From positions 7,254,001 to 7,318,000 of the forward strand of contig CM060733.1 in the NCBI GenBank assembly GCA_030704615.1: a stretch of DNA of 64,000 nt, read 5' to 3'. This document shows, piece after piece, positions 9,083 to 61,665 of this stretch. The stretch's first letter is position 1, and each line of letters opens with the position of its first letter. The stretch comes from Takakia lepidozioides. Taxonomy: Eukaryota > Plantae > Bryophyta. The position numbers and the translations under genes were made by a program. Below the pieces are notes generated by a model that did no database searches, had not been told where the DNA came from, and saw only the letters and a list, made by a program, of their open reading frames with translations.

Positions 9083-10282
9083 TTTTTTTTTAATCTTTTG
9101 CACTTTGTTTTTCTTTGTTTTTTTTATAGAATTCATTCTAGTGGTCCGAGTTTCCGTTTTTTATAAATATAAATACTCATATATTATATATATAACTAGA
9201 AAAGCATACACGTGCAGTCATGTAGTGATTCTTCCATGTGATGATTTGGCAGAATGCATTAGAGTGAGAGTCATAAAGTCATATGTCCATCTAGCAATAT
9301 GCACACATCATTCCAGTGTAGCCATGACCGTGACTCGTAGTCATATCCGCCATGCCAATATTCGTGGTCAAACATGTTTGACCTGTGTTGCGCAAAGTCC
9401 GGAGTCATGCAGTCGCATATACGCCTTTCCCCAGACCAGCATTATGACTTCAGAAGCATTTACGACTGCAAATGGCATTTCTGTCACAAATTTGTCATGA
9501 CTGCGCACCCAGAGTCATAAAAGCCGCAATCTGTTGTAGTGGGAGCCCCGTATGGTCAACACGTAATGTATGGCATGCTGCCCTTAAAGGACAAGCTCTT
9601 CGTAAGCTAGATTGTTCCCTTCCCATCAACAACCAACCTGATGAACTTGTAAATGAAATCAGAGATCACCTGGGCTAAGCTATTTTCATATACGCTAAAG
9701 CAGTTGACTGACCGCCACCTAAAATAAACGATTGGTCGTATAATGAAGAGCCAGTGTTTTGATTCACACACTGCGTGGTTGAGTGGCAATGGAAAACCCA
9801 TTACTGTATCTGATGACACATGGAACAAGCTTGTAAGTTATTGGCAGACAGAGGTGTTCCAAAAAGTGTCGGGCAACATGAAGAAGGCAAATGGTGCAAT
9901 CCAAAATCCTACCAAAACTGGCCGTGGTGGGAAGGCAATGGTGGAGTAACGCTTGGTCAGTGGCATCATCACTACTATGTATTTCATTCCTCATTGAAAC
10001 ACTATGTGTATATAGTGTGCCCTCATATTGGTTATTGACTTGTGGGATGTTTTTGTTTGTGGCATGGGTTAAATAAATTGCAGGAAGCACTATCAGGGTG
10101 CCCTCCTACATTACATGAAATTCAAGAGGGCTCAGTGTCACGGATGTCAGGTGGGAGCGAAATGCGGGTAATTCAATTTTCCACGTTTGCTTTCCTGGTT
10201 GCTTCATCTTGATTCTTGCTAGGTTTTTTTCTATCTACATTTTTGGGCTAGGTTTTCTTAGAAAACTTCCCTTCACTTGTTT

Positions 10283-10585
10283 CCAGTCCTCCTTAGAGGC
10301 TGTAGTGTCCAAAGCCAGCATTGTTGCCATTAAATTGTCTAATGAAAATGAAGTTAGGCAGAAAACTTCCCTTGACTTGTTTTATGTGACTTAGAGGCTG
10401 TAGTGTCAAAAACCGGGTCTGTTGCCATGATATTGTCAGATGAAAATGAAGTTAGGCAGAAAACTGACCTTCACTTGTTTCTAGTCTGTGACATGGGGGA
10501 GGGCATCATTGTTTTGCTCAAAGTAGGCGCAAGGTCAATGGCCACAAGGCTACATCAAACAACGTCTTATGAGTACATTCTTTCC
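10283..10585 (+). repeat. LINE-derived fragments (partly duplicated) in a TnpA intron
   Basis: TTAGAGGCTGTAGTGTC..GAAAATGAAGTTAGGCAG occurs twice and matches 61083-61170. The tail GGTCAATGGCCACAAGGCTACA..CGTCTTATGAGTACATTC matches the LINE 3' end at 59670-59720. Confidence 0.7.
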
Positions 10586-18341: not shown

Positions 18342-18561
18342 TTATATCACTGTCGTGTTATACCTAAAGGGTTGTGGCGGATTTAGGTGAATGATATCTA
18401 TATTGCCAATTGTGTCTTGCCTCACCCTAACGAGGAAGAGGTCCCACCGCAAACAATGTTGGAGGATGTCGTCGGTCTGAATTGTCTTTGGCCAGAGAAG
18501 AACATAAGATGGCTTAGAATTTTGTTCGCCCGGGCATAGACATTGCTGGCAGTGAGAAGAA

Positions 18562-19766: not shown

Positions 19767-20614
19767 CACTAGAGGGAAAACGCGGAATAACCACTCTGTT
19801 AACCACTCATTTTGAGTGGTAAAAGACACTAAACCACTCTGGCCCCAGAGTGATGAAGAACCAGTGGATTAGGACAAGTGAGTGGTAAAAGACATTACGT
19901 GGCACCAGTGGTTAAGGACAGTGGTTCGAACCACTTACATTTGGGTCCACCTGTTTGCTGACGTGTCACAGTGGTAAATTAACCACTGTGACATGTCACT
20001 GAGGTAAACCAACCACTTATGACGTGTCACAGTGGTAAAGTAACCACTTCCGTTTTCCAGTGGACACATGTAAGCCGGTGGTCCGTGGATGATATTGGAG
20101 ATTATGTCGACACGTGGCGACACTCTCAGCATGGACACGTGTCCTGTGTAGGTGCTACGAAACGGATGGAGTGAAAAATTCAATGACTTCCGAAACCACT
20201 TGTTGAGTGATCACGAAATGACTCACAGAGTCATGCTATGAAAACTGAGAATATACAATATCACTCACAGCGTGGTTATGTGAGTGGATGATGTCTCTCA
20301 GCAGGTCATTGGAATGATTACCCACAGAGTAGTATGTAAGTTGTTTGAGTCATCCGTGGTGTCTCTTTGAGTGAGAACTATGGATTGGAATGATTACTAA
20401 CAGAGTTGGTGTATAAGTGATTAGGAATACCACTGTAGGAATTCATACCACTAATACAATAATATATAGGTGATTACTTATACCACTACAGGAGTGGTAA
20501 TGGAGGCAATTGTGTGCATCTGACTACTCCCATAGTTTTAAATTATACCACTATTACAGTGATGTGCAAGTGATTAGGAACATGACTAGATGAACACATA
20601 CCTTTAGTGTAGTG
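19767..20614. mobile_element. CACTA-like non-autonomous insertion with mismatched ends
   Basis: Starts CACTAG at 19767 and ends GTAGTG at 20614. AACCACT/AGTGGT repeats are dense in the left half and ATACCACT/CACAGAG in the right half. No TSD match (ATG vs AAA). Confidence 0.55.
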
Positions 20615-34983: not shown

Positions 34984-37900
34984 ATGGACCAGGCTGTGGA
35001 GCTGAAATGGGCATCCATACTTGTAATGCAGAGCCGGGAATCCTTCCAAGGGCTGGCTTTGACGCCTCCCAAGCCTCCAGGGACACAGAAGAAAGGTATC
35101 AATGTCTAAGACTTCCACTATTTTTTGGAGTCTCTAACCTGTGCACATCGGAGTGATCCATGATCCCGATTATTCTAGAGCTATGTGAGCCTAATCTACA
35201 GCCTTTTTGGTCGAGGATTTCGACACAAGGTCACTGTAAATGGCTAGTGTAATTGACGTCCTTTCCTCAGCTCCTCAGTATCAGCCTCAACATCCTGCGA
35301 TGTCTGAAAATTCTGGTATACTTGTCGACTAATTTATGCGGCTTGCTTGGAGCCCATAACCCGTTAACCTGGTTTTGGTCAAATATAGCTCCTCCAATCC
35401 ACTCTGACAAGTTCCAAGAGGTGAAAGCATTTTCATCTCGCTCCTAGTTGATACGCATTGTTGTGATTCCTGGGGCGGAGGAGAACCATAATGGTTAGTC
35501 ACATGCTCAACGGGACAGAGAGATGTAATCACCGTTGAAAATTGCGTACTGAGAATATTGTCCCGCAGCATAAAAATCCTCCGGGAGCCAGTTTGTGGGT
35601 TTCCGTTCTATCCCGCGCACAGCCTACGGCAATCCGTTTACATGGAATGAGTGTCCTGGACTGCAGAAACAATGCTAGAAAACATCAATTTCATTCCAGG
35701 ATTGCTGGACACCCCCCAAAATCCGATACAGATACTGTAATTGCGCTGCCAGTTACACTACTGGGGAAAGGGCAGGGGGGTCAATAGAGACACGATGTAC
35801 TCATTCACAGCTCCCTGCAAACTGTCTATGATCGCCCTTAAGCCTGGTGAGACGTTCTAGCAATGTCCATTCCAAAACTAGTGCTGTAGCGCCTAGTTTT
35901 GTGACGAATAGGGCAGAGAGAGGGGCCCAGAGATTGAAAGAGAGACAGGGAGAGAAGAAAGAAGAAGCAACATATTTTTGAAGACCACTATACTACGAGA
36001 GGACCAAGAGGTATTTTGTGGAAGCCTAGAATATTATAACCCATGCCATTAGGTGCTGGTAAAAATCTTATTTGCTGGTGTTTGCATGCAGGCCAAGCAA
36101 CAAGCAACAGCTTTGGCAGGAGTTCATGTCAGATCCTTTGCACAGGTTGGACCATAAGTATGATGAGGTGAGGGTATCTATATTATTTTCCAATCTTAAA
36201 AGTTAGAGAGGACAGTATGGAAGTTGATGTTCTCAAAGTTGTGACCTGTTGTTTCAAGCAATGCTGTGGAGCTTTGGTGGCAGCCTGGTTATCAGGCTGT
36301 GGTTGCTCAGTTCCACACCGGTGGTTTTCACAGAAACATCCAAGGTCCCCAGACTTCATACATAAGTGCAGAAACGAGGACATTTATATTGAGATTCCAG
36401 CAAAGCCCCCTTGGGAAAAAACAACACTAGCGACCATGGATGGTGATATCAGAGTATGACTCTAACTTTGGTGTGGACATTGGAGCTCCATTGAAGTTTC
36501 GAGATGGGCGAGAAGATTTTGTTGGGATAGCAGATTCTAGTGGAATTACACAGTCTGATAAAACATGGGCTGTGGAGGACAGTTTGTATCCCCCAGAATC
36601 AATGCTTGAAGCCTTGGCCTTATAAACCTCTTCCTCCACTTATGCAACGTCTAATGGTAGGTATTTTTTAATCCTTTGTGTGTGCATCAGGCAGGGAAGT
36701 GCCCGGAATAACTTGCACCGAAATGTTATTCAAAGCTACAATAGCAGTTCTCGTTACGTGCGAGGCCATTGGAGCTTCAACATTCTCACATAAGACCAGC
36801 TCTTGGATGCAGGTTAAGCAATGAGTAAACAGTGGCTCTGGAATGGGTTCTTCTCAGATCCTTCACGGTCGTGGGACAACATGTGTGACAAGGTGAGGCT
36901 ATTTCCATTTAGGACGAGAGGGTTGTGGCTGAAGCTGGCATCGTGATGTGTAGTGGACTGGATTGTATCTCCTTGAGTAATGGCAATCTTTCTCTATTGC
37001 TGCTTTTGGACAGCATGAAAGTAGGTTATTGAAGATCACTCCCAATTATTTCAAAGATGTTTAGATCTTTGGTAGTTGTAGCCTGCTCTCTGGGAGGCTG
37101 TGCTGGAAGCTATGGCCGCTGCATGGTTTTCACAGAGAAGTCCAAGATCAACGGACTTCAGACACAAGTGCACAAAGGAGGTGCTGTGGATTCAGAGTTG
37201 GTCGAACCCTGCTTGGTTGAAAGCAGAGCTAGCTGCCATGATACAAGGTCAAGTACAACCTAGTGATGGTTCAGATGGCGGTGTACAACATGGAGCTCCA
37301 AGCCTAGAGTGCAACGGGTATTATTTTGATGATAATTGAAGGGTTCCAATTCAAAAGGATAAAAATGGAACAGCTTAGTCTCAACATAGATGACAGTTTT
37401 GTAACCCTCTTAATATCTAGCATGAAGCCTGTCTTCACGAAGAGATCTTTCTTGTAGGATCTAGTAGCTTTGGGCGATATTATTTGAGTCGCGAGTGGAA
37501 AAATCTGAAGTTAGGAGTTTTGAGACGTGCAGGCTGGCAGGGTTGAGTGCAACACAGCTGTTTGTTGGACATCAGACCGGCCCCAAGGGTAGCACTGCCA
37601 CTGTCACTACTGCTTTTGGAGGAGCACCAAAAGAGGGAGTCGTCAACAAGGATTCTACTGGCACTCCTGACTATATGAGGACACTAAGTAAGGCAGGACG
37701 AGTGAAAGAGGCACTGCACATTTTGAACCAATCAGGCATTCGAGCAGACTCCAATACTTATGTCTGGCTCTTACAGGAGTGCATCAACATGAAAGATTTA
37801 GCAGGGGGAAAGCAGGTGCAGGCCCAAATCATTCAAAGTGGACACAAGCCAAACCTCTTACTACTCAACACCCTTGTGAACATGTTTGCCAAGTGTGGGA

Positions 37901-39780
37901 GCATAGTGGATGCACGACAACTGTTTGACAAAATGCCTGAACGAGATATGTTTACGTGGACTATAATGATAGGCGGATATGCCAAGCATGGTTGTGCTAG
38001 GGAGGCTTTCAAGATGTATGAACAAATGCAAAGGGAAGGGGTGAGTCCCAACCAGGTCACCTTCATTTGCCTTCTCAATGCATGTGCCACCCTAGGAGAC
38101 CTGAAAAAGGGTAAGGAGGTCCATGCTGGGATCATTAAAGCTGGAATAGCCTCATATATAAACTTGGAGAACAGCCTTGTCGACATGTATGCCAAATGTG
38201 GCAGCATGAAGGATGCACATGAAGTGTTCAACAATATGGCTGACCGAAATGTGATCTCATGGAGTGCAATGATCGCAGGATATACTCAGCTTGGGTGCAG
38301 TAGTGAGGCTTTGGAGATCTATGAACACATGCAACAGGAAGGGGTGACTCCCAACAGGGTCACATTCATTTGCGTTCTCAATGCATGTGCAAGTCTAGGA
38401 GCGCTGGAAAAAGGCAAAGAGGTCCATGCTGGTATCGTCGAAGCTAGAATAGGGTCATACATTAAGTTGGATAACAGCCTAGTGAACATGTATGCCAAGT
38501 GCAGTGACATGGCGGACGCTTATAGAGTTTTTGACAATATGGCTGAACGAGATGTGGTCTCATGGAATGCAATGATCTCTGGATATTCTCAGCATGGGTG
38601 TGGTACAGAGGCTTTGAAGATGTATGAGCAAATGCCACAGGAACAGATGACACCTGATAGGGTCACATTCATTTGTGTTCTCAATTCGTGTGGCAGCCTA
38701 GGAGCCCTGGAAAAGGGAAAACAGGTTCATGCTGACATCCTTAAAGCTGGAATAGATACATATATTAATCTGGAGAATGCCCTCGTCGACATGTATGCCA
38801 AATGCGGGAGCATGAAGGATGCACGCCAATTGTTTGACAGTATGGCTAAACGAAATGTGGTCTCATGGAGTGGGATGATCACAGCATATGCTCAGCATGG
38901 GTGTGGGAGGGAGACCCTGCAACTATTTGAACAAATGCAACAGGAAGGCTTGAAGCCAAACAGCATCACCTTCATCTCTCTTCTGTCTGCCTGTAGCCAT
39001 GTGGGCCTACTGGCTGAAGGCTGTCACTACTTTGATTCTATGAGTCATGATCATGACCTCACCCCTACAGTGGAGCATTTTGGCTGCATGGTAGATCTTC
39101 TTGGCCGTGCAGGGCAAGTGGATGAGGCAGAGGATTTCATAAAAAATATGCCAATCAAACCAGATATTGGGGTGTGGAGGGCCTTGCTCGGTGCCTGCAG
39201 AGTTTATGGTGATGTGAAAGTAGCAGAACGGGCGGCAAAAAGCATTGTTGAGAGTGATCCACAGCATGCTGCATCTTATGTGTTGCTGTCAAACATATAT
39301 GCTGCGGCTGGTAGGTGGGACGATAGGGCAAAGGTGAGACAAATGATGGAGGTCAGGCGTGTCAGAAAGGAGCCAGGGTTCAGTCGCATTGAGGTCGATG
39401 ACCGCATACATACATTTGTTGTAGATGATAAATTGCATCCGCAAATTGAGGAAATCCATGCTGAGCTGAAGAGATTGTTTGGGCAGATGAAGCAGGTGGG
39501 GTACATGCCTGATACACGCTTTGTCTTGCATGATGTTGAGGAGGAGCAAAAGGAACTTTCTCTTTGCTACCACAGTGAGAAGTTGGCCATTGCTTTTGGG
39601 CTCATCAGCACACCCCCTGGGATGCCCATCCGCATCATCAAGAACCTTCGGGTGTGTGGTGACTGCCATGCAGCCACAAAGTTCATCACGAAGATTGTTG
39701 GGCGAGCAGTTGTTGTAAGGGATGCCTATCGCTTTCACCACTTCCAAGATGGGGTTTGTTCATGTGGAGATTACTGGTAA
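34984..39780 (+). CDS. PLS-class PPR-E-DYW RNA editing factor (paralog 2)
   Basis: Main exon 37533-39780 has KEPG (PG box), HSEKLA, CGDC and CSCGDYW. A homologous first exon ends AAAG|GTATC at about 35095. Small PDF-motif exons at 36092-36167, from 36334, 36813-36892 and from 37135. Confidence 0.9.
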
Positions 39781-40243: not shown

Positions 40244-43200
40244 ATGGGAGAGGTTTATAAAGTTGGTTGCTTTTTCCTCGTTCATCGACATCTTTTCATC
40301 CACGGAAGCTCCAAATTTTTCAAATCCTCCGAGAAATCATCCCTGTTAAGGGGTGGAGGCATCCTCTTCGGAAGAGCAGGCAGGAGATTGATGGCGGTGC
40401 AATGGAGATGCGGCTTCTCAATGGCAGGGGAAGTGAAGAAAGGTATGGACTCGCAACTCTTTGTATGTAGCATTCAGTGGGTTGTGGGCGTCGGAGCGAT
40501 CCAGGCTCCAGAAAACAAGTTCACTGGATTCTGTCAGGCAAAAACGGAAGTCCCGCTTTGAAATCCAAGAAGTGAAGCATTTTTGAGCTCACTCTTTTAT
40601 GTCGGTTGCCAGTTAGCTTGGATATGAAGCACATTGCTGTGTCTCAGCTGGAGCAGGGGAGAAACAATTCCCAGCCACACTCAGGGGGTAATAAGGAGTA
40701 GAGAGAGATGTACTCGTTGGCCGTTGACTGACTTCTTCTGAGGTACTTGTCGCTGAAGGATATCAACCCTTTGCAAGTCGGTTGTGGGATTCTTTGCACG
40801 TATGTCAATCCAGTCCGAAACGGCATCATGCTAGCACAGCCAACAGCAATCCGGTACATTGTGGCACGGTAGCCTTGTGGCCATTGACCCCGCGCCCACT
40901 TTGAGCGGAACACAAAGGGACAGAAACTACCTTTGTCAGGAGCTGACGCCGGTAGTATGACTTACCTTGGAACAGACAATTGATCCGAGTTTTCCAGATA
41001 TCCTCTAGAAATCCCTTTACACAAGCATCAATCTGCTGTGTGTGATTTGCCCCACTGAAGAGAGAGAGAGAGAGAGAGAGACTAGACCAACATTTCTTGT
41101 TAGGTTACGCAATTCTGAGACGCCAAACAGTTATGTTTTAATGTGTTTGCATGCAGACCAAGCAATTAGCAGAAAGCTGCTGTGGCAGGATCATACGCTA
41201 GATCCTTCCCAGTGGTGGGACAACTGGTCTGATAGGTGGCTGTGCAGTTTTAGTTCCTAGAACAGAAAGGATTCGTTTAATGTTTGCATGCGTTTAATGT
41301 TTGCATGCAGACCAAGCAATAGCAGAAAGCTGCTGTGGGGATCATACGATAGATCGTCCCAGTGGGGAAACTGGTCTGATAGGTTGCGGTGCAGTTTAGT
41401 TCCTAGAACAGAAAGGATTCCTTCCGACTGATGCTGGTGATGGTGTACGTTTATGTACTAGACCCGATTGGTAAGTGATCTGCTATATTGTAGGTTTTTG
41501 ACCATGCGAACTCGATTTGTCGTTGATGGACATTTGTGGAAATTTTGTATGCTGGTCTATATGGAGTTTGGTTAAACCATTGTTGCTCAGCTGCACACTG
41601 GTGGTTTCTGCAGAAAAGTCCGAGACCAGCTTTCGGGCATATGCATACACATGAGGTTCTTTGGTTGACAGTTGGTGGTTCGTACTGTTTGATGAATTGC
41701 AGTGTTCTAGAAGTTTTAAAATATATTATGTAAGTTAAAGAGTTCTAAGTTTGCAGTGTTAAGATATTATGAGTGGAGTTTAGTTTGCAGTGACATTGAG
41801 TCATTTAGGATGGTAGCGTTAAATCAGGCACAATTTTTAGTCGGACATCAGACTGGTGCCAGGGGTAGCCCCTCTGCTTTTAATAGAGGACCAGGAGAGG
41901 CAGTCAACAAGAATTCTTCTGGGACTTTTGAGTGTGTGAGGACACTATGTAAGACAGGTCATCTGAAAAAGGCGCTCCACATTCTGGACCAACCAGGCAT
42001 CCAGGCAGACTCCAGCACTTATCTCTGCCTCTTGCAGGAGTGCATCAACAAGAAAGACCTAGCACGGGGAAAACAGGTGCAAGCGCACATCATCCAGAGT
42101 GGATTAAAGCCAAACATTTTTCTTCTCAACACCCTCGTCAACATGTATGTCAAGTGTGGGAGTGTGGTGGACGCTCGTGTAATGTTTGACAAAATGCCTG
42201 AACGGGATATGTTTACATGGACTATGATGGTGGCAGGATATGCCAAGCATGGACATGCTGAGGAGGCTTTCAAAATCTATGAAGAAATGCGACGGGAAGA
42301 TGTGATGCCAGACAGGGTAACATTCACTTGTGTTCTGAATGCATGTGCCAGCTTAGGAGCCCTGCAAATGGGCAAGAAGGTCCATGCAGACGTCATTAAA
42401 GTTTGGATTTTGCCAGATATTATTCTACAAAATACCCTTGTCAATATGTATGCCAAATGTAGGAGCATGAAGGATGCACTTGAAGTGTTTGAGAATATGG
42501 CTAGACGAAATGTGGTTTCATGGAGTACAATGATTGCAGGTTATGCCCGATGTGGGTGTGGTATGGAGGCTCTCAAGACCTATGAGCAAATGCAACAGGA
42601 AGGGTTAACCCCTGACAGGGTCACGTTCACTTGTGTTCTCAATGCATGTGCCAGCCTAGGAGCCCTGGAAAAGGGGAAACAGGTCCATACTGATGTCATC
42701 AAAGCTCGAATTGCACCAGATGTGATTCTGGAGACTGCCCTTGCTGACATGTATGCCAAATGCGGTAGAATGAAGGATGCACATCAAGTTTTTGCGAATA
42801 TGGCTGAACGAAATGTGGTCTCATGGAGCGCTATGATTGCAGGATATACTCAGAATGGGTGTGGTAGGGAGGCTTTTGAGGTCTATGAGCAAATGCAACT
42901 GGAAGGGGTGACACCAAACAGAGTCACGTTTATTTGTGTTCTTGACGCATGTGCCAATCTGGGAGCCCTACAAAAGGGCAGAAAAGTGCATGCCGACATC
43001 ATCAAAGCGGGAGCAGGAATTGCGTCATACATCAATTTGGAGACAGCGCTTGCTGACATGTATGCCAAATGTGGGAGCATGAAGGATGCACGTCAAGTGT
43101 TCATGAACATGGCTAAACGAGATCTGGCCTCATGGAGTGTGATGATGGCAGGATATGCACAGCATGGCTGTGGTAGGGAGGCAATGCAACTATTTGAACA

Positions 43201-44133
43201 AATGCAACAGGAGGGATTAGAGCCAGACGGTATCACATTTATATCCCTTCTCTCTGCGTGTAGCCATGTGGGTCTAGTGGACGAAGGCTGTCACTACTTT
43301 GATTCCATGAGTTGTGATCATGGCCTGACTCCTACAGTGGAGCATTTTGGCTGCATGGTGGATCTTCTTGGTCGTGCAGGGCAATTGGAAGAGGCAGAAG
43401 ACTTCATTGACAAAATGCCAATTGATCCAGATGCTGGGGTGTGGAGGGCCTTGCTTGGTGCCTGCAGAATTCATGGTGTTGTGGACGTAGCAGAACGTGC
43501 CGCAAAATGCATTGTTGAGAGTGATCCATGGCATGCTGCAGCTTATGTGCTGCTATCAAATATCTATGCTGCAGCTGGCAGGTGGGATGATAAGGCAAAG
43601 GTGAGAAAAATGATGGAGGACAGAGGTGTAAGAAAGGAGCCAGGGCGCAGCTGCATTGAGGTCGACAATCAGGTGCACACATTCGTTGTAGAAGGCAGAG
43701 TGCATCCACAAATTGATGAGATCCATGCTGAGTTGAAAATATTGTCTGTGTGGATGAAGGAAGCAGGATATGTTCCTGACACACATCTTGTATTGCATGA
43801 CGTGGAGGAGGAGCAAAAGGAACTTTCTCTTTGCTACCACAGTGAGAAGCTTGCCATTGCCTTTGGCCTCATCAGCACACCACCTGGGATGCCCATGCAC
43901 ATCATCAAGAACCTGCGAGTGTGTGATGACTGCCACACTGCCACCAAGTTAATCTCAAAGATTGTTAGGCGAGCAGTTGTTGTACGGGATGCAAACCGCT
44001 TTCACCATTTTGAAGATGCTGCACACTGCCACCAAGTTACTCTCAAAGATTGTTAGGCGAGCAGTTGTTGTACGGGATGCAAACCGCTTTCACCATTTTG
44101 AAGATGGGTTGTTCTTGTGTCGATTATTGGTGA
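40244..44133 (+). CDS. PLS-class PPR-E-DYW (paralog 3) with C-terminus disrupted by an 88-bp duplication
   Basis: Predicted exons 40244-40442, 41157-41235 and about 41809-44056. HSEKLA and CDDC are intact. The CSC.DYW codons at about 44110-44133 are out of frame. Confidence 0.85.
40860..41060 (-). mobile_element. 3' fragment of the LINE family also found at 60796-61665
   Basis: Reverse complement matches 61470-61625 (GATTTCTAGAGGATATCTGGAAAACTCGGATCA..GTTCCGCTCAAA); abuts a (GA)n run. Confidence 0.75.
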
Positions 44134-50482: not shown

Positions 50483-53474
50483 AATTCACAGTTCTTAGCC
50501 GCAATCTCATTGTAGACTACCACCCCCTACCTTCTGCCTCTAGGACTAGCCGCATACCTACATAAGGCACCCCATCTCAGGGAATTGTTAGCCAGAGAAC
50601 TTGGAAAGTCTCTCAGAGCCCCAAGTCTTCTTGCGGTCTTGGATGTCTCTTTGGCCTTGTGGACATAGTATGTGTGGCTTCCTTCATTGCGTGTGGTTGC
50701 AAACATGTGTTACGTTACTGCAACAATTCTAGCTCCCATTGTATTAAAGATCCGTCCCCATACCACATGAGCAGCCCTTGATTCACCTTCCAAGAGTGGG
50801 GTTATGATGACTGCCTCCTAATAAGCAGATAAATGGAAACACTCCTTTCATTCATTTGTTCTGGTGCTTGATAAATGGTTTCTTCAACTTCCTTTGTGCG
50901 AGATCAAATTGCATTCACACTCTAAAAGTACATACCTTGTGGATATTTCCTGCAGAGTGTTTAATTCTGTTCCATTGTCTTTCCAAGACTGCAGTAGCCT
51001 TTATGGGTTGAGAGGCAGTGTAACATGCACTGGCCAGCACCACTTGATCAGTACTGTAGCCTGTTCACTTTTGACATAGACTGATTCATGTCATGTGGTT
51101 CCAGACCAGAAACATTATCCTGAGTTTCCACCAAAGAAGAAGTGGGTGGCAACCAACTGTTCCATAACTTGGGAGGACCACTTATACTTTCCGTAAAGCA
51201 CTCCTGGTTCTTTTCCGGTGGTGATCCTCAAGCAGAACATTACTGAGGGTTCCTTACGCTGCTGAAGGCCCTGGCCAGGCTGGCGAGGTTCCTTACGCAG
51301 GTTGTAAGGTACGCCCTCTTCAAAACTATTACATGTGGCAGCATGTGCTTTATGCTGGGCAGCCCCGAGTGGAGGGCGTTCCTGATTTGAGGGCCCCAAG
51401 CCTAGTGCACTACAGTGTTAACTGGCTTTCCTAGTTTGATGACAGAAGCTTTCAGCTTTGGACTGCTAGGCCAAGCTGATTACCTTGCATGATAGTAAGG
51501 GGAAAAAGCCATTAAGGCTAGTCAATGATGCACACTCCTAAACCCGTTACTCAGTGAATAATTCAAACACAGTCTCGCAAATCTATCATTATGACTCTTT
51601 AACAAAAAGTATTGCACCTTTTTCTCCACCCATTATTTTCAAACCTGGGGGATCCAAAACTGTGTGCCGCGCTAAAAGACGCATATTACGTCAACTCTAA
51701 ACTAGCGTTGCAGCTTGCAGTTGAAGTTCCCAGTCAAAAGGAGCTACAATGTGAAAGCTGAAATGAAGCTCGACTGGGAAGCTGATTCTGGTTGTACTAG
51801 GAGTGAGATGCCCTGACCAAACTTGAGAACTTAGATTTAATCGTTCAACAAATCCCGGGGTGGGCCTTCTTCAATCTGCACAATTTGGCACCACAACTGC
51901 AGTCACTACACTCAATCCCTGCAGGGTCTTTTCAGGGGGGCATTCTGTCCCTAGTTTCCATAGATGAAATGAATGAAACCTCATCAAGTCGATGTCCGAC
52001 GAAGGCTTTTGAAACTACAGTGCTGCTTGATCTGGTGAAGTCCACAAAGTTTTGAATGGACATATCATGTTTACGAACAGATTCGCCAAGCATTGTCGAA
52101 GGAGACTGTGCCCAGTCAGACAAAGCATAACAAGGGTGGACTATGTGGTGAACAGAAGAATGGACCACTATGACATGGAATGGTAGTCCCACTTACATTT
52201 AGTTGTGCCTCCACAGGTCTCGAGATTTCTAGGATAAAGAGGGGCTTCCAAGGAGGGTAATAATGGGTGTAATCAAAGTTGAGAAGAGGAAGTACCATGG
52301 TCCATGATAAGCACGTGGTGAAGGTCGATGATTGTGGAGATAATGATTGTGGAGATACGGTTGGCAATGGTGACGACTGTCATGTTGTGGCACTCTTTTA
52401 GTAGCGCTGTTGTGTGTGGGTCCACATTTGCTGTGCATTCATTGAAGCACAGGATCTGAAAGGACTCACGTCTTCATAATTCTCCTCTCAGCTACTTGCA
52501 ATTTCATGATTTATAGAAGACCAGTAGAGCAACCAAACTGTTTGATTCTCTTGGGCTCCCTTATGTCTTTTAGGAATTCTAATACAGATCCTTCAAGGTC
52601 ATGATCATCCCTAGAGTGAGAGGATAAAGTCTGAGAACACTAATGTGTCCAATTTTGAGCGCTGATATAATAGCATGACAAAGTTGGAGGATGCAACTTA
52701 CTCTTGCTTAACTGTTAGCATTTTGTGTTTCTTTTGGCGGGAGGGGGAAGAGTGCACCCTCACTTACCTCATTGAATCTCACGTAGGGAAAGTAAAATAT
52801 AGAGCCATGAGGCTTTAGAGGGCCATCACCCACTCGAAAAGGACAGAAAGGGGGATTCAGAAAGACCGCAAATCCATAAAAGCAATTAGAGCTGAAAACA
52901 AAGGGCAGCAAAGGGGTAACACAGGAGAAAGATTGATTAATGAGAAGAAAAAGGTGCACAGACAGCTGCCATAATCATGTACAAACATTTGACAAGAGGG
53001 AGGCCAGAAGGGACCTCAAGAATAACATGAACAAACCCAAACATTAACCACCCTAAGGCCCTCAGACAGGTCACCAAAGGCACTTGATCTTGGCTTTGCA
53101 AGAGGGGCTTGCTTGGAAGGGCTCCTGTTGACATCCTGTCAAAGTCAGGGGAGGGGGTTGTGTATCATGGTCGTAGTAATAATCCTCAAGTATCAGCAAA
53201 GATATTTCTAGCAAATTATTATTTGAAGATGCAGAGGTCTGCATTATTATCTGCCCTTGGCACATTTGAAGTAGAGCTTATGTCTCTGGGTATCGAGTTT
53301 CTGCAGTTGGCACTGAAAGAGTCTTGACAAGCTTGTGAGCACATTCCTATCTTTTTGGTGTGGATGTCGATGTGATTTGTTTACCAAACTTGCCACCCTG
53401 AGGAAAAGTAGGAGAGGGAGGGATGTGGGAGTACATGCACCCAGCAATTCGCGTACAATCAATAGACGCCCCGT

Positions 53475-56400
53475 CTAGTTATTGTTGCTGGAATTCCCAC
53501 TGCCAGAGCTCTGCAGCTGAGCCAAGTTGAAGGACGATGCAGGGGAGCCCCCACCATTTGAGCTGTTGTCACTCTCTCCTAGCAGTTGGCCATTGCTGCA
53601 ATTGCTGTATATCGCAGACCGCAAGCGGGCTTGACGCTTTCCTCTGTCCTGTTCAAGCACCAGATCATGCCACATCTGGTTGCGGAGGTCCTTCTCAAGC
53701 TTTCCATTGTAGAGGTCCAGCACTGACCCTGCATCAACGTTGAGTGCTACCAGATGACGCACGCCTGGGAATGTGTCACAGTCGATAAGCAGCTTGCTGC
53801 GTGGCCCATCCTTTACCCCTATCAACTGCACCCAGGCAAAAGACAAATAAATGTCCAAGCAGAACGAAGGATGACCTCTTCTTTTGCTAGTGGAGGGCAA
53901 CTTTCAAAGGTCCACACCTGCCTCTCGAAAGAAGACAAATGGGTCACAACAATGCAATGTATGTTTTCATGTTCAAATTTAGAGCTATGCCTAAACATTA
54001 AGTGGTGGCAATTGATTCCCTGCAAATACCCCTGGATTAGAGATCCGAAAAGGGAGGCTGAATCTGATTTAACCTTTTGGTGTGTACAGGTCAGCTCTGA
54101 TTAAGATAGATTCTGATTGAGGATCTCCTGTTCTTGGGGCCAACTGAAGCCCACTGGTGGATGTCTCCTCACCCCTGAGGGAATCCTGTGACAGTACTGC
54201 ATGGGAGCATTTACAAACATGCCAAACAGAGTGTTAGCAAAACCCAGATTCCATGGGGGCAGGACTGGTCTCCAATACCTCAGCAGGGCCATACAATCGG
54301 CTCGTGGAATAGATCTTGGCATGGTCCACCACCTCAATGTATTTGTCCAGCGACTTTGCAAACAACTTATGAGACCGCAGCTGCCCTTTAATTGGCACCC
54401 CCCTCTTTGTCAATATTGCCCTCCTGGAAAACCAGCCACAAGAAGCTTCATAACACAAAACACTCCAGTACAGCTGAATGTGCTAGCAGGATACCCCTCA
54501 AACTCTCTACTCAAACTCTTCATGTTCTGCCAAATTCACAAAAGTGCTGTCCACCTCAAATGTAGGTATCTTTCACCCCACTTCCGCATAACATGAAACT
54601 GCAGCTGGCATGCAAGCAGGCCTATATCTGGGAGCATATCAGGTCAAATGAGCTCAGACATTTGACCAACAAGCTGTAACTAACTCAGGAAAAACAAAAA
54701 CGCAAATGACAATTGAATGCTGTCACCTCATGCCCCGCACCACTGTCAGATGTGCATCACAAGTGACACCGACAAATTCTATTCGATAAGGTTTCTTCCC
54801 AACATTCTCACTTCGCCCAGCTTCTGAAACCTGCCCGTTGATCTTCTTTTCACTCAAGGTCTCACCATTCAGTGTGTCAACTGAACCATTCTCTTGATTT
54901 GTGCCATTGCAATCATCGGGCACAGGTTCCCAGTATTTCTCAACAACCACCCCATCCTCTCCTTCATGATATCCAGGGCCCATGCGATACCGTCTGCCAA
55001 GTGTTTCTCATTGCAATTATTGTCCAGCTTGACATTTCTATTCTGTTCCAGTAAAACCTGACTTTTCAAGATCAATAAAACATCCATCAAGGAACAGTAG
55101 AACTGTGACAGAGTCTATGAGAGATGTAGTCATAAGATGTTTACCGTAGCCTTGTGGCAATAGACCCCACGCCCAGTTTGGGCAGAACAGGGTAGTGGGT
55201 GCGGCACCAGGACTTCCTGGGAGGTCACCCATCCCAGGACTATTCCGGCCCAAAGGCGCTTGACTTCAGAGATCTGATAGGGTGTGGTGCATTGCTATGA
55301 CCGCACCACGAGTCTATGGGAAACGAAATGGTGCGTTATAACGTCCATGGGAAGCTCAAAGAGCTTATGGGACAACAGGAAAGAAAGAACCGTGAGAGAG
55401 AGAGAGAGTTTGTAGCCATTGAGCAATGCCAAACTTGCAACCCTACTTTTGACTGGGCGGAAATGGAAACATTACTCATTAGACTGCTTGCTGGAGCATT
55501 GTGGTCATTTGAAAAACTACCTGCGGTGGATGTCACGAGCCATGGCAATGGTTTGAAGAAAAAATGGCTCCCATGACATGGTTCCATCAAAGATGACATC
55601 ACGTCCTTCATTCAATGCTGACACCAGCAGTGACGATGCAGCATTTGTTGAGAACTGGTGCACCTACATTTCCCAAAGTCATCCCCTCCACTCGGATTAA
55701 TTGTATTTGTGGTTAGACAGTAACATAACCCTCCCATCGGTTGCTCTCACTGGTTATGGACCAGAATCTATCGGTTCTGGTTTATCAGTAACACAAAGAG
55801 ATGTTAGAGACCAATGGCATGATAAACTTGCGAATTTCTAGATAGTGTGGTGAACATTAGATACTAACTCGTTTTGGCTTAGGGGATTTTGAAAGCTGGC
55901 ACTACATCAGGGCCCCCATGTGATGACAGTATTACAGTCTCCAGTGGAAACCCAAAATCTGTGTAGGATTGAATTGAAAGACTTTGATACAACATGGTCT
56001 CAACCAGTTCCATCAGCTCATAGATTGGCAACTCACAAACTGAGCAGTCCCTGCCATGTCATCTTGGCCCATTGAGCTGAGTGCACGGTAGATGACATCT
56101 GTCTCCTTGAATGCATCCGCCTCTACCACCACTGCATTGTGTGCTGCTCCTGACCAGAATGAGCTGCAGCCCGGCAATCATACAACTCATAGTAAAAAAA
56201 TGAGCAGCGGGCTTCCAATAATTATGAAACATGTCTACCACTTGCTACATATTTTGTTGTTCCATGTGCCATTAACTAGATTGACAGATAGAGGTGAGGC
56301 CTTGCTAGAAGACCATCAGACCCGCTCTAACTTACCTGAGACGGCCTCTTACAGCAAGAGCATACGCACCCACAGGCCAGAAACCTCATTGCATATATGA

Positions 56401-59400
56401 ATATCTGATTATCCATCTAGAGAAGATGAATGTCAACTACTGAACACGTAAATTGGGCCATAATTTTGGCACAGATGAGAATCTTGAAGTCAGAAGTATA
56501 TACCCTTTGAGAATTTCATTGACAACAGTGCTCTTGCCAGCACCCATGCCGCCACCAATGAGAAGCAACACAGGGCTTCGCACAGATGAATCTGCAACCA
56601 CCATCACCTGGCCCTTATCTGGGACTGATATATTTGGAGAGCCTAGGGCCTTCAGCTGCTCCACCAGCGTTAGAAACGCACGCTTTGTACTCAGACATCT
56701 CAACAGCTCCTGGTATTGCTCCTTTCGGCTTTCCACTTTATGCTTTCTGAGCCACCATATGCCAGAAAAACCAAAGGGAGATGGTTAGTGGACTCACACT
56801 TACTGTCCATCACAATGCACACCTCTTTCTACCACAACTCATAATCTCTGCTGTGCTTGATGATGAACATCCCACAGAAAAGTTCATTCGATGGCCTTTG
56901 GTGAAGAGCAACAGCAGGCATGGTCAAAGAAGTGACATTTGTGAAGCCTAATTTCTTGTTATGGACACAGAACAAATGGGGTTCATGTCAAACCATGGGA
57001 CCCACCCAGCTACCGACAAGAAACCAGACCAGGTTTCCGGTTCAATGATGCAGAAAACATGACCGGTGTTTGGCAACATCACTACCAACGAAGAGGATCA
57101 GCTTAAAACACTTGCTGCTTGTTGTAGGCACAGAAAAATATGGAGTATGTTCCACAAGATGGGCAAAATCAATTCCTTCATGTGGCCTATGTCAGGAGTT
57201 TGCAAGCTTTGTCCTACTCACCAACTGAAGACAGCTACTTCATCACTATATTTTTTGGACTCTTGACAATTTAAATCTGGCAATGGAAGTATCGAGATAA
57301 CTCCATACTTACAATCAAAGGTAGCCAAAAAAGAAGTACTGAGAATATCTGATATAACGTTAGAGGGATCATGAGTCCAACAACTGCGCAAAGGTGCACA
57401 ATCTTGGTTGGACTTCAGAAATTTCAAACACATCCCTTTCACAGATTGCACCCTAACCTGGGTGACAAAGGGGTGACAGACTTACTCACACACCTGGTAG
57501 CAGACAAGACAGCTCTGCGCAATTTGCTCTGCATCCCGCCCCCAGTGCTGACTACCTGTATTCACTGCCACAACTCAGTGCCTACCATGGAAGTCCTCTA
57601 ATGTATACATTACAGTGATCAATTCTCGAAGCTTTGTGTACAGGAATGACCAAAGAAGTGGCAAGAGGCCAATTTGGTGGGCCACCGACAACAGTCAAAT
57701 AATGGTTACTTCCTGCAGCAGTGCTCTGCATTGCAAAGCACTGAGTAAAAAGTTTTGAAGTCCTTGAATGGAAAAAAAAAAAAATTTGCAGCAAGCACTA
57801 ACCAAATTTTTGAAGCAGGACACACCAGTGTTAGTATAAAACCAATGCAAATGTGTTTGGAATTCCTTAGGCTCAAGCAGCTTGGAGGCCAGAATGTGCT
57901 TACCTGCTGGATGAGAGCTGAAGAATGCGCCCAATGAAAGCTGAAGTAGGCCAAAATGCATGCATCCAGCTCCTTCAATACCTCCTCGTTCATATGCTTG
58001 ATCTCTTTATCTGACTTTTGCTCAACCCCCCTGGATGCAAGTATGCATACATTTTCGCGGCTGCTGTCAGATGAGCTTTTATCACCCCGCAGATAGTCTT
58101 CTGCCACTTTGGCCAAGTTTTTGGCAGCAGGTGTGTCTGCATTGAGTCCGAGCTGCCGTACTGTTCTACACAAGATTCCATGCTTGGAAAAACTCATTAA
58201 AAGAGTAGAGATATGAAAAGCTTTGAAGGACATATTTTGTCTAATGCCTGTCTTCTTTATTTTGTAGATTGCACTCCCATAACATGAATCGGAGTTCCTC
58301 AGAGCATTAGTTCATTACATTGGCTCATAAACAGGTAAATTGTGAGGTGCAATAGGATGTCTAAAACTTCCCTTAAATGCTTCACAGCCAGGGCATCTCT
58401 CCTCTACTTTCAGTTTACTCTCGTCCAGCTTCCAGTGGAACTCATAAACTCTCTCTAGTATGTACTCTCTTGACTTCTCTCTCTAAACTAGTTTTTGCCT
58501 ATGTACCACTTCTCTTGCTTCATAATTTTTCTGTTGATAGAACCAATAAACAAAACCTTTGACTCCATGACACAGATCCCTGGACATTAGGGATATGGAT
58601 TTGATCGATTGAAGGACCTTCCTCATGGAATTGGAGAACTCATGTTCATTTCTACCATTTGGCAATCTGATTTCCTTTAAAGGCTTGAGTTGACGGCTCT
58701 CGAATGGCATGATATCTTTCCTCTCATGTCCATAGCTAATGCAGATCATATCTCAAGGAAGGAAGGCTCTATCAATGGATGTTTGTTGCAGAATGCATTG
58801 ACCTCTCCCTCAAGGAACACTCACCTAGAACACATGGCTCTCAATTTTTCCTTACTAGTTTCCCATACATTGATCTACTTGTTAGAAGTGCGATGTGATA
58901 CTTGCCATTTAGACTTTGCTCCGATCTCCTATGTCTCTCTTGGTGTACATCGATAACAACTAGGAGAAGCCAGTTTGCTCTGGCTCGGATCGAAACAGAA
59001 GGCTTCAAGTTTACCTTGTTAGCCACGAGTACTGCTGTCTAATGACTGAGTTATTCCAAACATTGTGACTGATGTTTGGATTTTCAGTACGAGTTTGGAA
59101 AGTCATGGAGGATGCTCTTTCAATATGCTGGTTAAACTCCAAGCTATGATGTCATCTGATTGATAGTATGTCTATCAGGTGCCTGACATCTAAAGGTCAT
59201 ACCTAAACTTCTCTGGCATTACGTCCCACCCACTCACCCACCTAGACAGAGGGAATAATAAGACTGTAAAGTACGATGGAGCCTTTTCTAGGCAGATGAT
59301 ATCATCAAATTTCTTGAAAACAGCAGTAATGAGTCACTATCTCTTCGGCCTGCCTACCTACCTCAGCACTAGACTGAAATTTTAAAAAGGGGTGGGGAGT

Positions 59401-60251
59401 CTACCTTCGAAATTTTCTGATACAGAGTCACGGGTATTCTCATAAGAGAGCGACCCTCTTCAGGACCATCAAGAACATAGTCCCTGCACCTCTGTTGACC
59501 AACTTTCAAAATCTCAAGGCTAGAGCCCTGACCCTGTTGGGGTCTGCTGGGCAGCACATACAGCAGATTGATGCTTGTGTGAAGGGCTTTCTAGAGGAAA
59601 TCTCAAAAGCCCGAACTAATGGAGTGAGCCAAAAGCAGTGTCTGTTCCCTCTTGCTCCGCCCAAACTGGGCACAGGGTCTATGGCCACAAGGCTACAACA
59701 ATCGTCTTAGAAGTACATCCTCTCAGCCTTTTTCACTTTTTTTCCCCTTGACTCGTGAGAAGTAAGGAATTCATTTCTTTCATTCTCTTTTGTCTTTCTG
59801 TTTTCTTACTTTGTCTCGGCCCTTGTGGACGGTTTGTCCTTCATTCTTTCTTATACCTTGGTTCCCCGTGCCTAAGGGCCAGGTCTATGGCCACTGGCTT
59901 CCTCAAGCAACATTTAATTCTCAGATCAGCATCCTGTTTGGTGTGTTAAATCCCCAAGACTGGTTCCTGGAGGACTAGTATAGTGAGGACATTATGTCCT
60001 CCAGGATAAGTCTTGGCCAGCATTTGCGGGGACAGCTATTCGTGCATCTCTCCTGTGCTGGCAAATAAGATAGACACACAGGGAGGCATACCAACATAAT
60101 CGCCAAAACGTTCAACCTTTTTTATGTCACCCCCCTTGGTAAACTGCACACGGGGAATCAGACGCTGGTCCTTGCGTTTCTGGTCAAGATGACGCAGCAA
60201 ATTGAGCGTCCCGATTACGGCCACTGCCACGCCAACCACCACTTTTGCCAT
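53475..60251 (-). CDS. Calmodulin/Ca2+-dependent NAD kinase-like P-loop protein (zeta-toxin fold, At1g04280/NADKc family)
   Basis: About 8 exons (60251-60092, 58160-57904, 57555-57494, 56746-56504, 56163-56037, ~55663-55521, ~54993-54727, ~53800-53475). Features an N-terminal membrane anchor, GGGMGAGKST, VVEADAFKETDVIY, NEGRDVIFDGTMSW and KPYRIEFVGV. Confidence 0.88.
55120..55309 (-). mobile_element. 5S rRNA-derived SINE (SINE3-like) in a NADK intron
   Basis: 5S-like head 55307-55197 (..AAGCGCCTTTGGGCCGGAATAGTCCTGGGATGGGTGACCTCCCAGGAAGTCC..), LINE-like tail 55196-55120, and direct repeats GAGTCTATG at 55111-55119 and 55310-55318. Confidence 0.85.
59280..59725 (+). mobile_element. LINE 3' fragment
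   Basis: Similar to 61400-61660; ends CCGCCCAAACTGGGCACAGGGTCTATGGCCACAAGGCTACA..AGTACATCCTCTC. Confidence 0.7.
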
Positions 60252-60795
60252 CCTCTCCTCCTCACGTGTCTGCTTCTTTGCTCTTTACTGGATTCTCCTG
60301 CATCATCAGATGATGTCTTAGGAAACACTTATCTTTGTGTGTGGCTTAGTTCCTGCAACTGTATGTGACTTTTAACCAACTTTCCGTGCAATAGGTCTAC
60401 TTTTGGTGCTTGCATTCCGGTATATCGTAGATCTCTCTTTTACGGCTGGAGGTACTTTGTGAGAGTTCTTCTAGACTTGCTGGGAAATCTGAACGACTTT
60501 GTTTTGACAGTGTGATCTACAGTAGTAAAATTAGAGTAGCTATATGGAATACCTCCACAGGACTGAGGATGAAAGTGATATGCAGCGAACAGTTTCACAG
60601 GATCTACCACGTCTGGATAAGGGTGAAGAAAAATGTAGAAAACGGGCATGGATCCAGTCTTTCCAAGGTGAATGCACCTTGGATTTGGCAATATCATACG
60701 TGGATCCAGAGAGGACGAGTGCCGTCCACAACTACACAGTTGGTAGGACACATCTAACTCCAACACCATAGAACTATCTCTCTCTCTCTCTCTCT

Positions 60796-61665
60796 GAGCC
60801 CTCCAACTGTAATTGGGAAGCACATATACGAAAAGTGATTCAATCTGGCAAGTGCAAAGCGTTGGGTCTCACTAAAAAATTTCCACTGCAGAGTGATCGA
60901 CTCTGAAGTAACTATGCTTTGCAGCATTATGAGGCCTACCTTGGAGTACACATCTGCTGGTTAATGGACTCTATATCTTGGAAGCAGGAGCGCCCTGTCA
61001 AACAGCCTAAGTCCTGGTGGAAGAGGATAGTCAAGGATCTGATCTAAGTCTGCAAGCCATGACCCTGCTAGATAAATCTGACTTAGAGGCCGAAGTTTCC
61101 AAGGCCATGTCTGTTGCCAGGAAATTGTCTGATGGAAATGAAGTTAGGCAGTCTGTGACATGGGTGAGGCTATCATGGATGACTTCAAGGATTTACCCAC
61201 TCTCGGCACTCTACTGAAATTCAAACTCAGGGCGGGTAGCCTACCTTTGAACAGCAAACAGACGCAGAGAGGAAAGGGGGATTGTAAATGCCCGTTGTGT
61301 GGACAACCTGAAGACAATCCACTTCCTGATTCATTGTCCTGGGTACTCCCACCAGAGAGACACCCTCTTCAATTCCATCAAGTGAATTGTTCCTGTACCT
61401 GTGTTTACCAACTTCGAAAATGACGTGGCTGAGCCAAAAGCTCAGGCCCTTTTGGGGTCTAGTTATTGGGTAAATCACACATAGCAGATTGATATTTGTG
61501 TGAAGGGATTTCTAGAGGATATCTGGAAAACTCGGATCAGTTGCATGTTTCAACGTAAGTGATACTATCGGCGTAAGCCCCTGACAAAGGGAGTTTCTTT
61601 CCCTTTGTGTTCCGCTCAAACTGGGCGCGAAGACAAGGCTTCTGAGTACATTCTCTCTCTCTCTC
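60796..61665 (+). mobile_element. 5'-truncated degenerate non-L1 LINE with (TC)n tail
   Basis: WEAHIRKV..SIMRPTLEY (RT thumb) and KFKLRAGSLPLN..CPLCGQPED (C-terminal Zn finger); (TC)n on both sides. Confidence 0.7.

What the first reader, a model, noticed from the sequence alone, without database searches (positions are those of the whole stretch)
55111..55318. 5S rRNA-headed SINE with TSD and a visible partner LINE
Seen: a near full-length 5S-like head retains the region of the internal Pol III promoter. It is joined to an ~77-nt tail (GCCCAAACTGGGCGTGGGGTCTATTGCCACAAGGCTAC..TCTTATGACTACATCTCT) and flanked by a perfect 9-bp direct repeat GAGTCTATG. The tail matches LINE 3' ends at 59655-59725, 61605-61665, 10520-10585 and 40870-40910 (reverse complement). 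Established: SINEs borrow LINE 3' ends for retrotransposition; 5S-derived SINE3s are described mainly in animals, while plant SINEs are almost all tRNA-derived. Inference: a plant SINE3 family, although a one-off template-switch chimera is possible.
Basis: partly seen in the sequence, partly recalled or inferred. Interest (0 to 1): 0.8.

Follow-up and report, generated by a model that had tools for sequence, protein, structure and literature searches.

The report
5S rRNA fused to LINE tail
A decayed but complete copy of 5S ribosomal RNA was pasted into this plant genome joined to the last ~70-75 bases of a resident retroposon; this is how a 5S-derived SINE is built (a kind not reported in plants), but it is more likely a one-off by-product of a LINE's copying enzyme.

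Summary
On the minus strand, 55308..55195 is a whole 5S rRNA (Rfam 59 bits, all 120 model positions, 6-nt internal deletion). It runs straight into a 70-75-nt tail (55194..55120). A perfect 9-bp target-site duplication encloses both. The tail matches the 3' ends of four other retroposon fragments in the window, two of them only in part. These share a terminus (...GTACATYCTCT(CT)n, no poly(A)) and have different 5' extents, as 5'-truncated LINE copies do. No reverse transcriptase of that family lies in the window, and no database search confirmed that it is a LINE.

This is not a Cassandra TRIM: there is one 5S in 64 kb, no LTR pair, and the duplication is 9 bp rather than 5.

I could not test whether it belongs to a multiplying family. 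The genome is not in the searchable collections, and the two indirect searches I could run found no second copy with this junction.

The scan has found this before on other DNA of the same genome. At least ten other loci are noted, with reported tail lengths of 53, ~65, ~80, 262 and ~300 nt. Different junctions point to repeated independent 5S/LINE fusions, like human U6/L1 chimeras, rather than one SINE3 family.

Odds: chimeric by-product 0.6, low-copy SINE3 family about 0.3.

The parts
55309..55317 (.). Target-site duplication, copy next to 5S nt 1 (GAGTCTATG on +, CATAGACTC on -)
   Evidence: Read directly. The script finds it as the only 9-mer shared between the two flanks.
55195..55308 (-). 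5S rRNA-derived head: complete (positions 1-120) with a 6-nt deletion at positions 18-23. Box A is at 55265..55251, IE at 55248..55243 and box C at 55235..55218.
   Evidence: Rfam RF00001, 59.1 bits, E 7.6e-10. 84% identical to moss 5S L008:1453-1571.
55190..55194 (-). Junction, 5 nt (TACCC on the minus strand) of unclear origin: a terminator U plus filler, or a LINE variant
   Evidence: Alignment A1. Clear homology to the other copies begins at 55189.
55120..55189 (-). Retroposon (LINE-type) 3' tail, 70 nt, ending ...GACTACATCTCT. It contains the small hairpins GCCCA-AAC-TGGGC and GCC-ACAA-GGC.
   Evidence: blastn against three other copies, E 3e-9 to 2e-11; alignment A1; fold.
55111..55119 (.). 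Target-site duplication, copy after the tail terminus
59355..59724 (+). 5'-truncated copy of the tail-donor retroposon (L59), with a complete 3' end
   Evidence: blastn against 61194-61524 and against the element's tail; alignment A1
60793..61665 (+). Longest copy of the tail-donor retroposon (L61, ~870 bp). It has a decayed ORF with RT-thumb-like and CCHC-like motifs (read by eye), an internal deletion in the tail, and a (CT)n end.
   Evidence: The motif MRPTLEY is at 60932-60952. No Pfam, PDB or word-search support.
40866..41058 (-). 5'-truncated copy (L40), 89.5% identical to L61 over 162 nt. It lacks the last ~35 nt of the tail and is preceded by (CT)11.
   Evidence: (I16)
10260..10585 (+). 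Rearranged copy (L10) with an internal 98-nt duplication and a complete tail
   Evidence: (D14)

Best explanation
This is a chimeric retrocopy made in one integration event by the reverse transcriptase of a resident non-LTR retroposon (LINE-type; its 3' end is ...GTACATYCTCT(CT)n with no poly(A)).

Inferred sequence of steps. The enzyme nicked the target and primed on the retroposon's own RNA. It copied the last ~70 nt, then continued on a 5S rRNA, either by jumping to the RNA's 3' end or because the two RNAs had been ligated beforehand. It copied the 5S rRNA to its first nucleotide. Second-strand synthesis left the 9-bp duplication.

Shown: the bipartite order, the sense orientation, the complete 5S from nt 1 to its 3' end, the shared terminus with other copies, and the single TSD. 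Inferred: the template switch or ligation, the LINE nature of the donor, and that this copy never multiplied. The copy has since decayed and sits in a non-coding stretch, probably an intron of a minus-strand P-loop kinase-like gene.
For: 1. The head is a whole 5S. It starts at nt 1 directly after the TSD and ends at the mature 3' end, as expected when a finished 5S RNA is the template.
2. Demonstrable retroposon homology begins 5 nt after the 5S end and runs to the same terminal motif as the other copies, directly followed by the second TSD copy.
3. The tail donors in the window share a 3' end and have different 5' extents (~190, ~330, ~370 and ~870 bp), which is the 5'-truncation pattern of LINE copies.
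4. Only one 5S-bearing copy lies among five tail-bearing copies in 64 kb.
5. A word search with the junction-spanning ORF found 17 proteins, all ordinary moss 5S rDNA read-throughs. None carried this tail.
6. Earlier follow-ups on the same genome report complete 5S heads fused to tails of 53, ~65, ~80, 262 and ~300 nt (unverified here). Different junctions mean independent fusions.
7. The same architecture is established for human U6/L1 chimeras: a full-length small RNA, in sense, 5' of an L1 3' end, inside TSDs, each a unique event that does not propagate. The proposed mechanisms are template switching or RtcB ligation (bioRxiv 10.1101/2025.02.02.635956; PMC6789731).
Against: 1. I could not search this genome, so single-copy status is not shown.
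2. The TSD is perfect although the head differs from moss 5S by 13 substitutions and a deletion. An old one-off insertion would keep 18 flanking bases intact only about 1 time in 3 to 8 (my estimate). A young copy from an already diverged master would explain this better.
3. The differences cluster outside the promoter span (3 of 13 within positions 50-97). That is the pattern described for SINE3 and Cassandra heads, but it is not significant here (Fisher p 0.23), and this organism's own 5S sequence is unknown.
4. Several noted loci are of similar size (196-226 letters), so a small sub-family with one junction is not excluded.
5. The scan notes at least eleven such loci in a genome of ~325 Mb. 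From that I would guess the rate per LINE copy exceeds that of human 5S/L1 chimeras; I did not count LINE copies here.
Confidence: 0.6

Rival explanations
1. It is a member of a genuine, probably low-copy, 5S-derived SINE (SINE3-type) family. A master copy would be transcribed by Pol III from the internal 5S promoter, and its LINE-derived tail would be recognised by the partner LINE's reverse transcriptase, so the unit multiplies.
For: - All the structural requirements are present: a 5S head with box A, IE and box C nearly intact (3 changes in 48 nt), a retroposon tail and a TSD.
- The 5' part of the head is more diverged than the promoter span, as reported for SINE3 and Ajax heads (PMC10886601).
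- The TSD is perfect despite a diverged head.
- Many 5S+tail loci are noted in this genome, several of about the same length.
- A TATAA lies at -32..-28 and a C at -1 upstream of this copy.
Against: - No second copy with this junction was found.
- The reported tail lengths in other loci range from 53 to ~300 nt, so there is no common junction (unverified).
- One earlier follow-up found only 1-3 look-alikes for its copy.
- The promoter-versus-rest contrast is not significant (p 0.23).
- The tail's predicted fold is no better than shuffled sequence (z -0.6).
- A 2024 review knows of no 5S-derived SINE in plants (PMC10946416), which lowers the prior.
Confidence: 0.3
2. It is a Cassandra-type TRIM or solo LTR, that is, a 5S sequence carried in the LTR of a non-autonomous LTR retrotransposon.
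For: Cassandra is the only 5S-bearing mobile element known in plants, and it occurs from ferns to angiosperms (PMC10946416; PMC10886601).
Against: - There is only one 5S hit in 64 kb.
- No direct repeats longer than 16 nt occur within 53000-57500.
- The TSD is 9 bp, not 5 bp.
- The unit starts exactly at 5S nt 1 and ends at the terminus shared with non-LTR-type copies.
Confidence: 0.02
3. Two separate events happened to lie side by side: a 5S retropseudogene or rDNA orphon next to an older retroposon fragment, with a chance 9-bp repeat.
For: Tail-bearing fragments are frequent in this window (five in 64 kb), so chance adjacency is conceivable.
Against: - The 9-bp repeat sits exactly at the outer ends of the two parts. 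By my estimate the chance of that is about 4e-6 per fixed position and under 1e-3 with some slack.
- Both parts have the same orientation, and at most 5 nt lie between them.
Confidence: 0.05

Closest known systems
U6/L1 and other small-RNA/LINE-1 chimeric retrocopies of mammals (Buzdin-type chimeras); also the LINE-mediated chimeric retrogenes of Magnaporthe (PMC2104539)
   Same: A full-length small Pol III RNA at the 5' end, in sense, joined directly to a 5'-truncated LINE 3' end. One TSD encloses the whole unit. Each event is independent and does not propagate.
   Different: The host is a land plant. The donor ends in (CT)n, not poly(A). The small RNA is 5S, whereas in human 5S/L1 chimeras the 5S part is mostly antisense and truncated. 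Here it is whole and in sense, like U6.
SINE3 (5S rRNA-derived SINEs: zebrafish SINE3, AmnSINE1, MEG-RL/RS, Ped-1, HaSE3 and other lepidopteran families)
   Same: A 5S-derived head with box A, IE and box C, a LINE-related tail, and a TSD.
   Different: SINE3 families are multi-copy with one fixed architecture, and amplification is not shown here. None has been reported in plants (PMC10946416).
Cassandra TRIM (plants) and Ajax TRIM (nemerteans)
   Same: A mobile element that carries a 5S-derived sequence with the promoter region conserved.
   Different: Those have two LTRs, PBS, PPT and 5-bp TSDs. This unit has none of these. Cassandra has been proposed to derive from a SINE3 inserted in an LTR, so plant 5S/LINE fusions are of interest as possible raw material.

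Membership tests
SINE3 (5S-derived SINE) | Head derived from 5S rRNA that retains the internal Pol III promoter (box A, IE, box C) | tested here: met
   Rfam 59.1 bits over model positions 1-120. Positions 50-97 differ from moss 5S at 3 of 48 sites. Promoter activity itself was not tested.
SINE3 (5S-derived SINE) | 3' tail shared with a partner LINE | tested here: inconclusive
   The tail is shared with four other retroposon 3' ends in the window. Their LINE nature rests on the 5'-truncation pattern and on motifs read by eye. Pfam, PDB, the word search and the big protein search gave nothing.
SINE3 (5S-derived SINE) | Retroposition hallmarks: a TSD, and a start at the RNA's first nucleotide | tested here: met
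   Perfect 9-bp TSD. The unit starts at 5S nt 1.
SINE3 (5S-derived SINE) | Multi-copy family: many copies with the same head-tail junction, shared diagnostic mutations and different TSDs | not testable with these tools
   There is one copy in the window. The genome is not in the searchable collections. A metagenome pattern scan gave 7 chance hits without 5S. The junction-peptide search found only genuine 5S rDNA. Earlier notes report differing tail lengths.
Small-RNA/LINE chimeric retrocopy (U6/L1 type) | Full-length small RNA, in sense, directly 5' of a 5'-truncated LINE 3' end | tested here: met
   At most 5 nt lie between the 5S end and the start of tail homology.
Small-RNA/LINE chimeric retrocopy (U6/L1 type) | One TSD around the whole bipartite unit, which ends at the LINE's own terminus | tested here: met
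Small-RNA/LINE chimeric retrocopy (U6/L1 type) | Each locus is a unique fusion (junction positions differ between loci) and does not propagate | not testable with these tools
   The only support is earlier scan notes giving tails of 53, ~65, ~80, 262 and ~300 nt. I could not read those sequences.
Cassandra TRIM | 5S sequence present in two LTRs that flank a short internal region with PBS and PPT | tested here: not met
   A single 5S in 64 kb. No direct repeat longer than 16 nt in 53000-57500.
Cassandra TRIM | 5-bp TSD | tested here: not met
   The TSD is 9 bp.

The most novel reading that the evidence does not exclude
This locus and its look-alikes elsewhere in the genome are copies of the first 5S rRNA-derived SINE (SINE3-type) family in a plant. 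They would be transcribed from the 5S internal promoter and mobilised through a (CT)n-ended LINE tail, and would represent the kind of element from which Cassandra-type 5S TRIMs were proposed to arise.
Probability: 0.27. Interest if true: 0.65.

Novelty: new member of a known kind. Interest (0 to 1): 0.35.

Why it matters
Plants are thought to lack 5S-derived SINEs. Their only known 5S-bearing mobile elements are Cassandra TRIMs, whose origin was proposed to be a SINE3 inserted in an LTR.

A bryophyte-like plant genome that repeatedly fuses whole 5S rRNA to LINE tails shows that the raw material for such elements is produced in plants. If even one of these fusions multiplied, it would be the first plant SINE3.

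If none did, the loci still record that this plant LINE's reverse transcriptase switches templates, or uses ligated RNAs, much as human L1 does with U6. As a single locus it is a modest finding, and the scan has already reported the same thing elsewhere in this genome.

Tried and rejected
- Cassandra or solo LTR: rejected.
- The RT ORF at 18345-19361 as the partner LINE: rejected. It has a dUTPase-like piece upstream, a YVDD motif, no tail nearby, and is the only RT core in the window.
- Confirming the donor as a LINE by homology: nothing usable. This covered Pfam on ten ORF pieces, the protein atlas, the word search on 61148-61420, the big HMMER search on 59378-59707 (only chance RTX-repeat hits), and PDB on two thumb-like pieces.
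- Metagenome scan for the 5S 3' part plus the tail core: 7 hits, all chance, none with 5S. It is no evidence against a family, because the organism may be absent from that collection.
- Tail pattern in bacterial/archaeal genomes and in viral contigs: 0 hits.
- Junction-spanning ORF search: only genuine moss 5S rDNA units with terminators and 26S linkage.
- Finding this genome in the public gene collection: two guessed ORFs were not on record, and the best relatives of a PPR-DYW gene are only 49-57% identical. The moss affinity rests on the 5S head (84% to moss 5S) and on earlier notes.
- A structured 'handle' in the tail: the predicted folds are no better than shuffles, and the small hairpins do not vary enough to test covariation.
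- The search of earlier findings by sequence and by words came back blank.

Full report
**What is there**

On the minus strand the sequence reads: CATAGACTC | 5S rRNA | 5-nt junction | 70-nt tail | CATAGACTC.

Rfam finds one family hit in the whole 64-kb window. It is 5S rRNA at 55308..55196, 59.1 bits against a gathering score of 38, E 7.6e-10, covering model positions 1-120 with a 6-nt gap in the helix II / loop B region.

To judge its state I fetched genuine moss 5S genes. These turned up as spurious ORFs in a protein word search and lie in rDNA units next to 26S rRNA (L008, L010, L011).
- They score 109 bits in Rfam.
- They are 99% identical to the 5S of Sphagnum compactum (L009).

The window's head is 84% identical to them: 13 substitutions plus the deletion of positions 18-23. 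It shares the moss-type stretch AAGCGCCTTTGGGCCGGAATAGT. It ends at …GCACCCAC, the position where the genuine genes continue into their T-run terminator. The head is therefore a complete but decayed copy of a mature 5S RNA, not a gene with its spacer.

**The tail and its relatives**

blastn of the 189-nt unit against the window gives three further matches to the tail:

| Copy | Coordinates | Strand | Identity | Length | E-value |
|---|---|---|---|---|---|
| L59 | 59653-59719 | + | 79% | 67 nt | 2e-11 |
| L40 | 40866-40912 | - | 85% | 47 nt | 8e-10 |
| L10 | 10510-10578 | + | 77% | 69 nt | 3e-9 |

A fourth copy at 61585-61665 (L61) carries an internal deletion. A 23-nt core of the tail has 3 matches where shuffles give none.

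In alignment A1, clear homology starts at 55189 (TGTTCTGCCCAAAC…) and runs to …GACTACATCTCT. The other copies end in the same way: …GTACATCCTCTC, …GTACATTCTTTCC, …GTACATTCTCTC(TC)n. The five bases between the 5S end and 55189 (TACCC) could be a terminator U plus filler, or a variant of the donor sequence.

The other copies extend upstream of the tail for different distances: ~190 bp (L40), ~330 bp (L10, rearranged), ~370 bp (L59) and ~870 bp (L61). A common 3' end with variable 5' truncation is the usual picture for LINE copies. The longest copy reads, in broken frames, MRPTLEY, CKCPLCG…, and IHFLIHCPGYSHQRDTLF. To my eye these resemble the thumb and C-terminal CCHC region of LINE ORF2.

No tool confirmed this. 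Pfam, the atlas, the word search, PDB and the large HMMER search were all blank or gave chance hits. The only RT core in the window (18345-19361, minus strand, YVDD, with a dUTPase-like piece upstream) belongs to a different, LTR-type element. So 'LINE' for the donor is an inference. It agrees with what earlier agents wrote about this genome, but I did not check those reports.

**What it is not**

It is not a Cassandra TRIM.
- There is one 5S in 64 kb.
- No direct repeats above 16 nt occur within 2 kb on either side.
- The TSD is 9 bp.
- The unit begins at 5S nt 1.

Nor is it two unrelated insertions that happen to touch. The 9-bp repeat sits exactly at the two outer ends, and the parts are co-oriented with at most 5 nt between them.

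**Family or one-off**

This is the question that matters, and I could not answer it directly. The genome is not in the collections I can search. Two guessed ORFs are not on record, and a PPR-DYW gene from the window has no relative above 57% identity.

I tried two indirect routes.
- **Metagenome pattern scan.** I scanned for the 5S 3' part followed at 40-70 nt by the tail core. It gave seven hits, all chance, none with a 5S.
- **Junction-spanning ORF.** The ORF at 55133-55294 (minus strand) reads through the 5S into the tail. A word search with it found 17 proteins, all translations of ordinary moss 5S genes followed by spacers. None had the tail peptide.

Both are weak negatives.

The more telling information comes from the scan's own notes on the same genome. 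At least ten other loci are described as a complete 5S fused to a LINE tail inside one TSD. Noted lengths run from 156 to 448 letters. Five follow-ups give tail lengths of 53, ~65, ~80, 262 and ~300 nt, and one reports only 1-3 look-alikes in data from the same organism. I could not read those sequences, so I treat this as a lead. If it holds, the junctions differ, which means independent fusions rather than one amplifying architecture.

That is the behaviour of human U6/L1 chimeras: a full-length small RNA, in sense, 5' of an L1 3' end, inside TSDs, each a unique event that does not propagate. They are made by template switching during target-primed reverse transcription or by prior RNA ligation (PMC6789731).

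**Points in favour of a SINE**

Three features keep the SINE reading alive.
- **Perfect TSD.** The TSD is intact although the head is about 11% diverged from moss 5S. This is easier to explain if a diverged master produced a young copy.
- **Where the differences lie.** They are mostly outside the promoter span (3 of 13 in positions 50-97), as described for SINE3 and Ajax heads. With one copy this is not significant (Fisher p 0.23). Several changes in helices I and V preserve or improve pairing and may simply be this organism's own 5S sequence.
- **Similar sizes.** Several of the noted loci are close in size (196-226 letters).

A TATAA at -32..-28 and a C at -1 upstream of this copy sit where plant 5S genes have upstream promoter elements (my recollection of the Arabidopsis work, not checked here). 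This may be chance.

**Verdict**

The SINE3-family interpretation is partly supported: the build is right, but multiplication is unshown and, on the available leads, unlikely.

My odds are:
- chimeric by-product of a LINE-type reverse transcriptase: 0.6
- low-copy SINE3-like family: about 0.3
- everything else: under 0.1

A 2024 review states that no 5S-derived SINE is known in plants (PMC10946416), and my literature searches found no later report. The SINE reading would therefore be new for plants. The chimera reading is a new host and a new LINE type for a known process. The scan has already reported the same kind of locus several times in this genome.

Noticed in passing
window 60775-60792 and 41059-41080: Two copies of the tail-donor retroposon (L61, L40) begin directly after a (CT)n run, and the family itself ends in (CT)n. 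Copies seem to insert into or beside their own terminal microsatellite, perhaps in tandem.
   Followed up: partly
window 55336-55340 (minus strand, -32..-28 from 5S nt 1) and 55309: A TATAA box and a C at -1 lie upstream of the retroposed 5S head, where plant 5S genes carry upstream promoter elements. This could make the copy transcribable, or it could be chance.
   Followed up: no
window 55145-55189(-), 59650-59700(+), 40866-40915(-), 61590-61630(+): Read in one frame, the tail copies all give …CSAQ(T/S)G(R/H)(G/R)V(Y/N)(G/C)HKAT…. This may only reflect nucleotide conservation of the tail. Earlier notes on this genome mention a conserved out-of-frame peptide after LINE ORF2.
   Followed up: no
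window 17040-19768 (minus strand): A retroelement fragment with a dUTPase-like piece (19469-19768) and an RVT_1 domain with YVDD (18345-19361), followed by six to seven 181-nt tandem repeats (17040-18345). It is unrelated to the tail family.
   Followed up: partly
window 26202-28463(-), 37495-39780(+), 41756-44056(+): Three paralogous PLS-type PPR genes with E, E+ and DYW deaminase domains in a 18-kb stretch, built of 303-nt P-L-S triplets. The best public relatives are only 49-57% identical.
   Followed up: partly
window 54700-56740 (minus strand): Exon-like ORFs of a P-loop protein (GGGMGAGKST; weak Zeta_toxin hit, E 0.0013). The 5S/tail unit lies in the same orientation between them, probably in an intron.
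   Followed up: partly
L008:1-1571, L011:1-6117, L009:1999-4358: Public moss-type rDNA units carry the 5S gene in the spacer after 26S (linked arrangement). Their 5S is 99% identical to that of Sphagnum compactum.
   Followed up: partly
window 573-1604 (minus strand): An intact-looking 343-aa ORF with a CACTA-type transposase domain (Transposase_21, E 5e-72).
   Followed up: no
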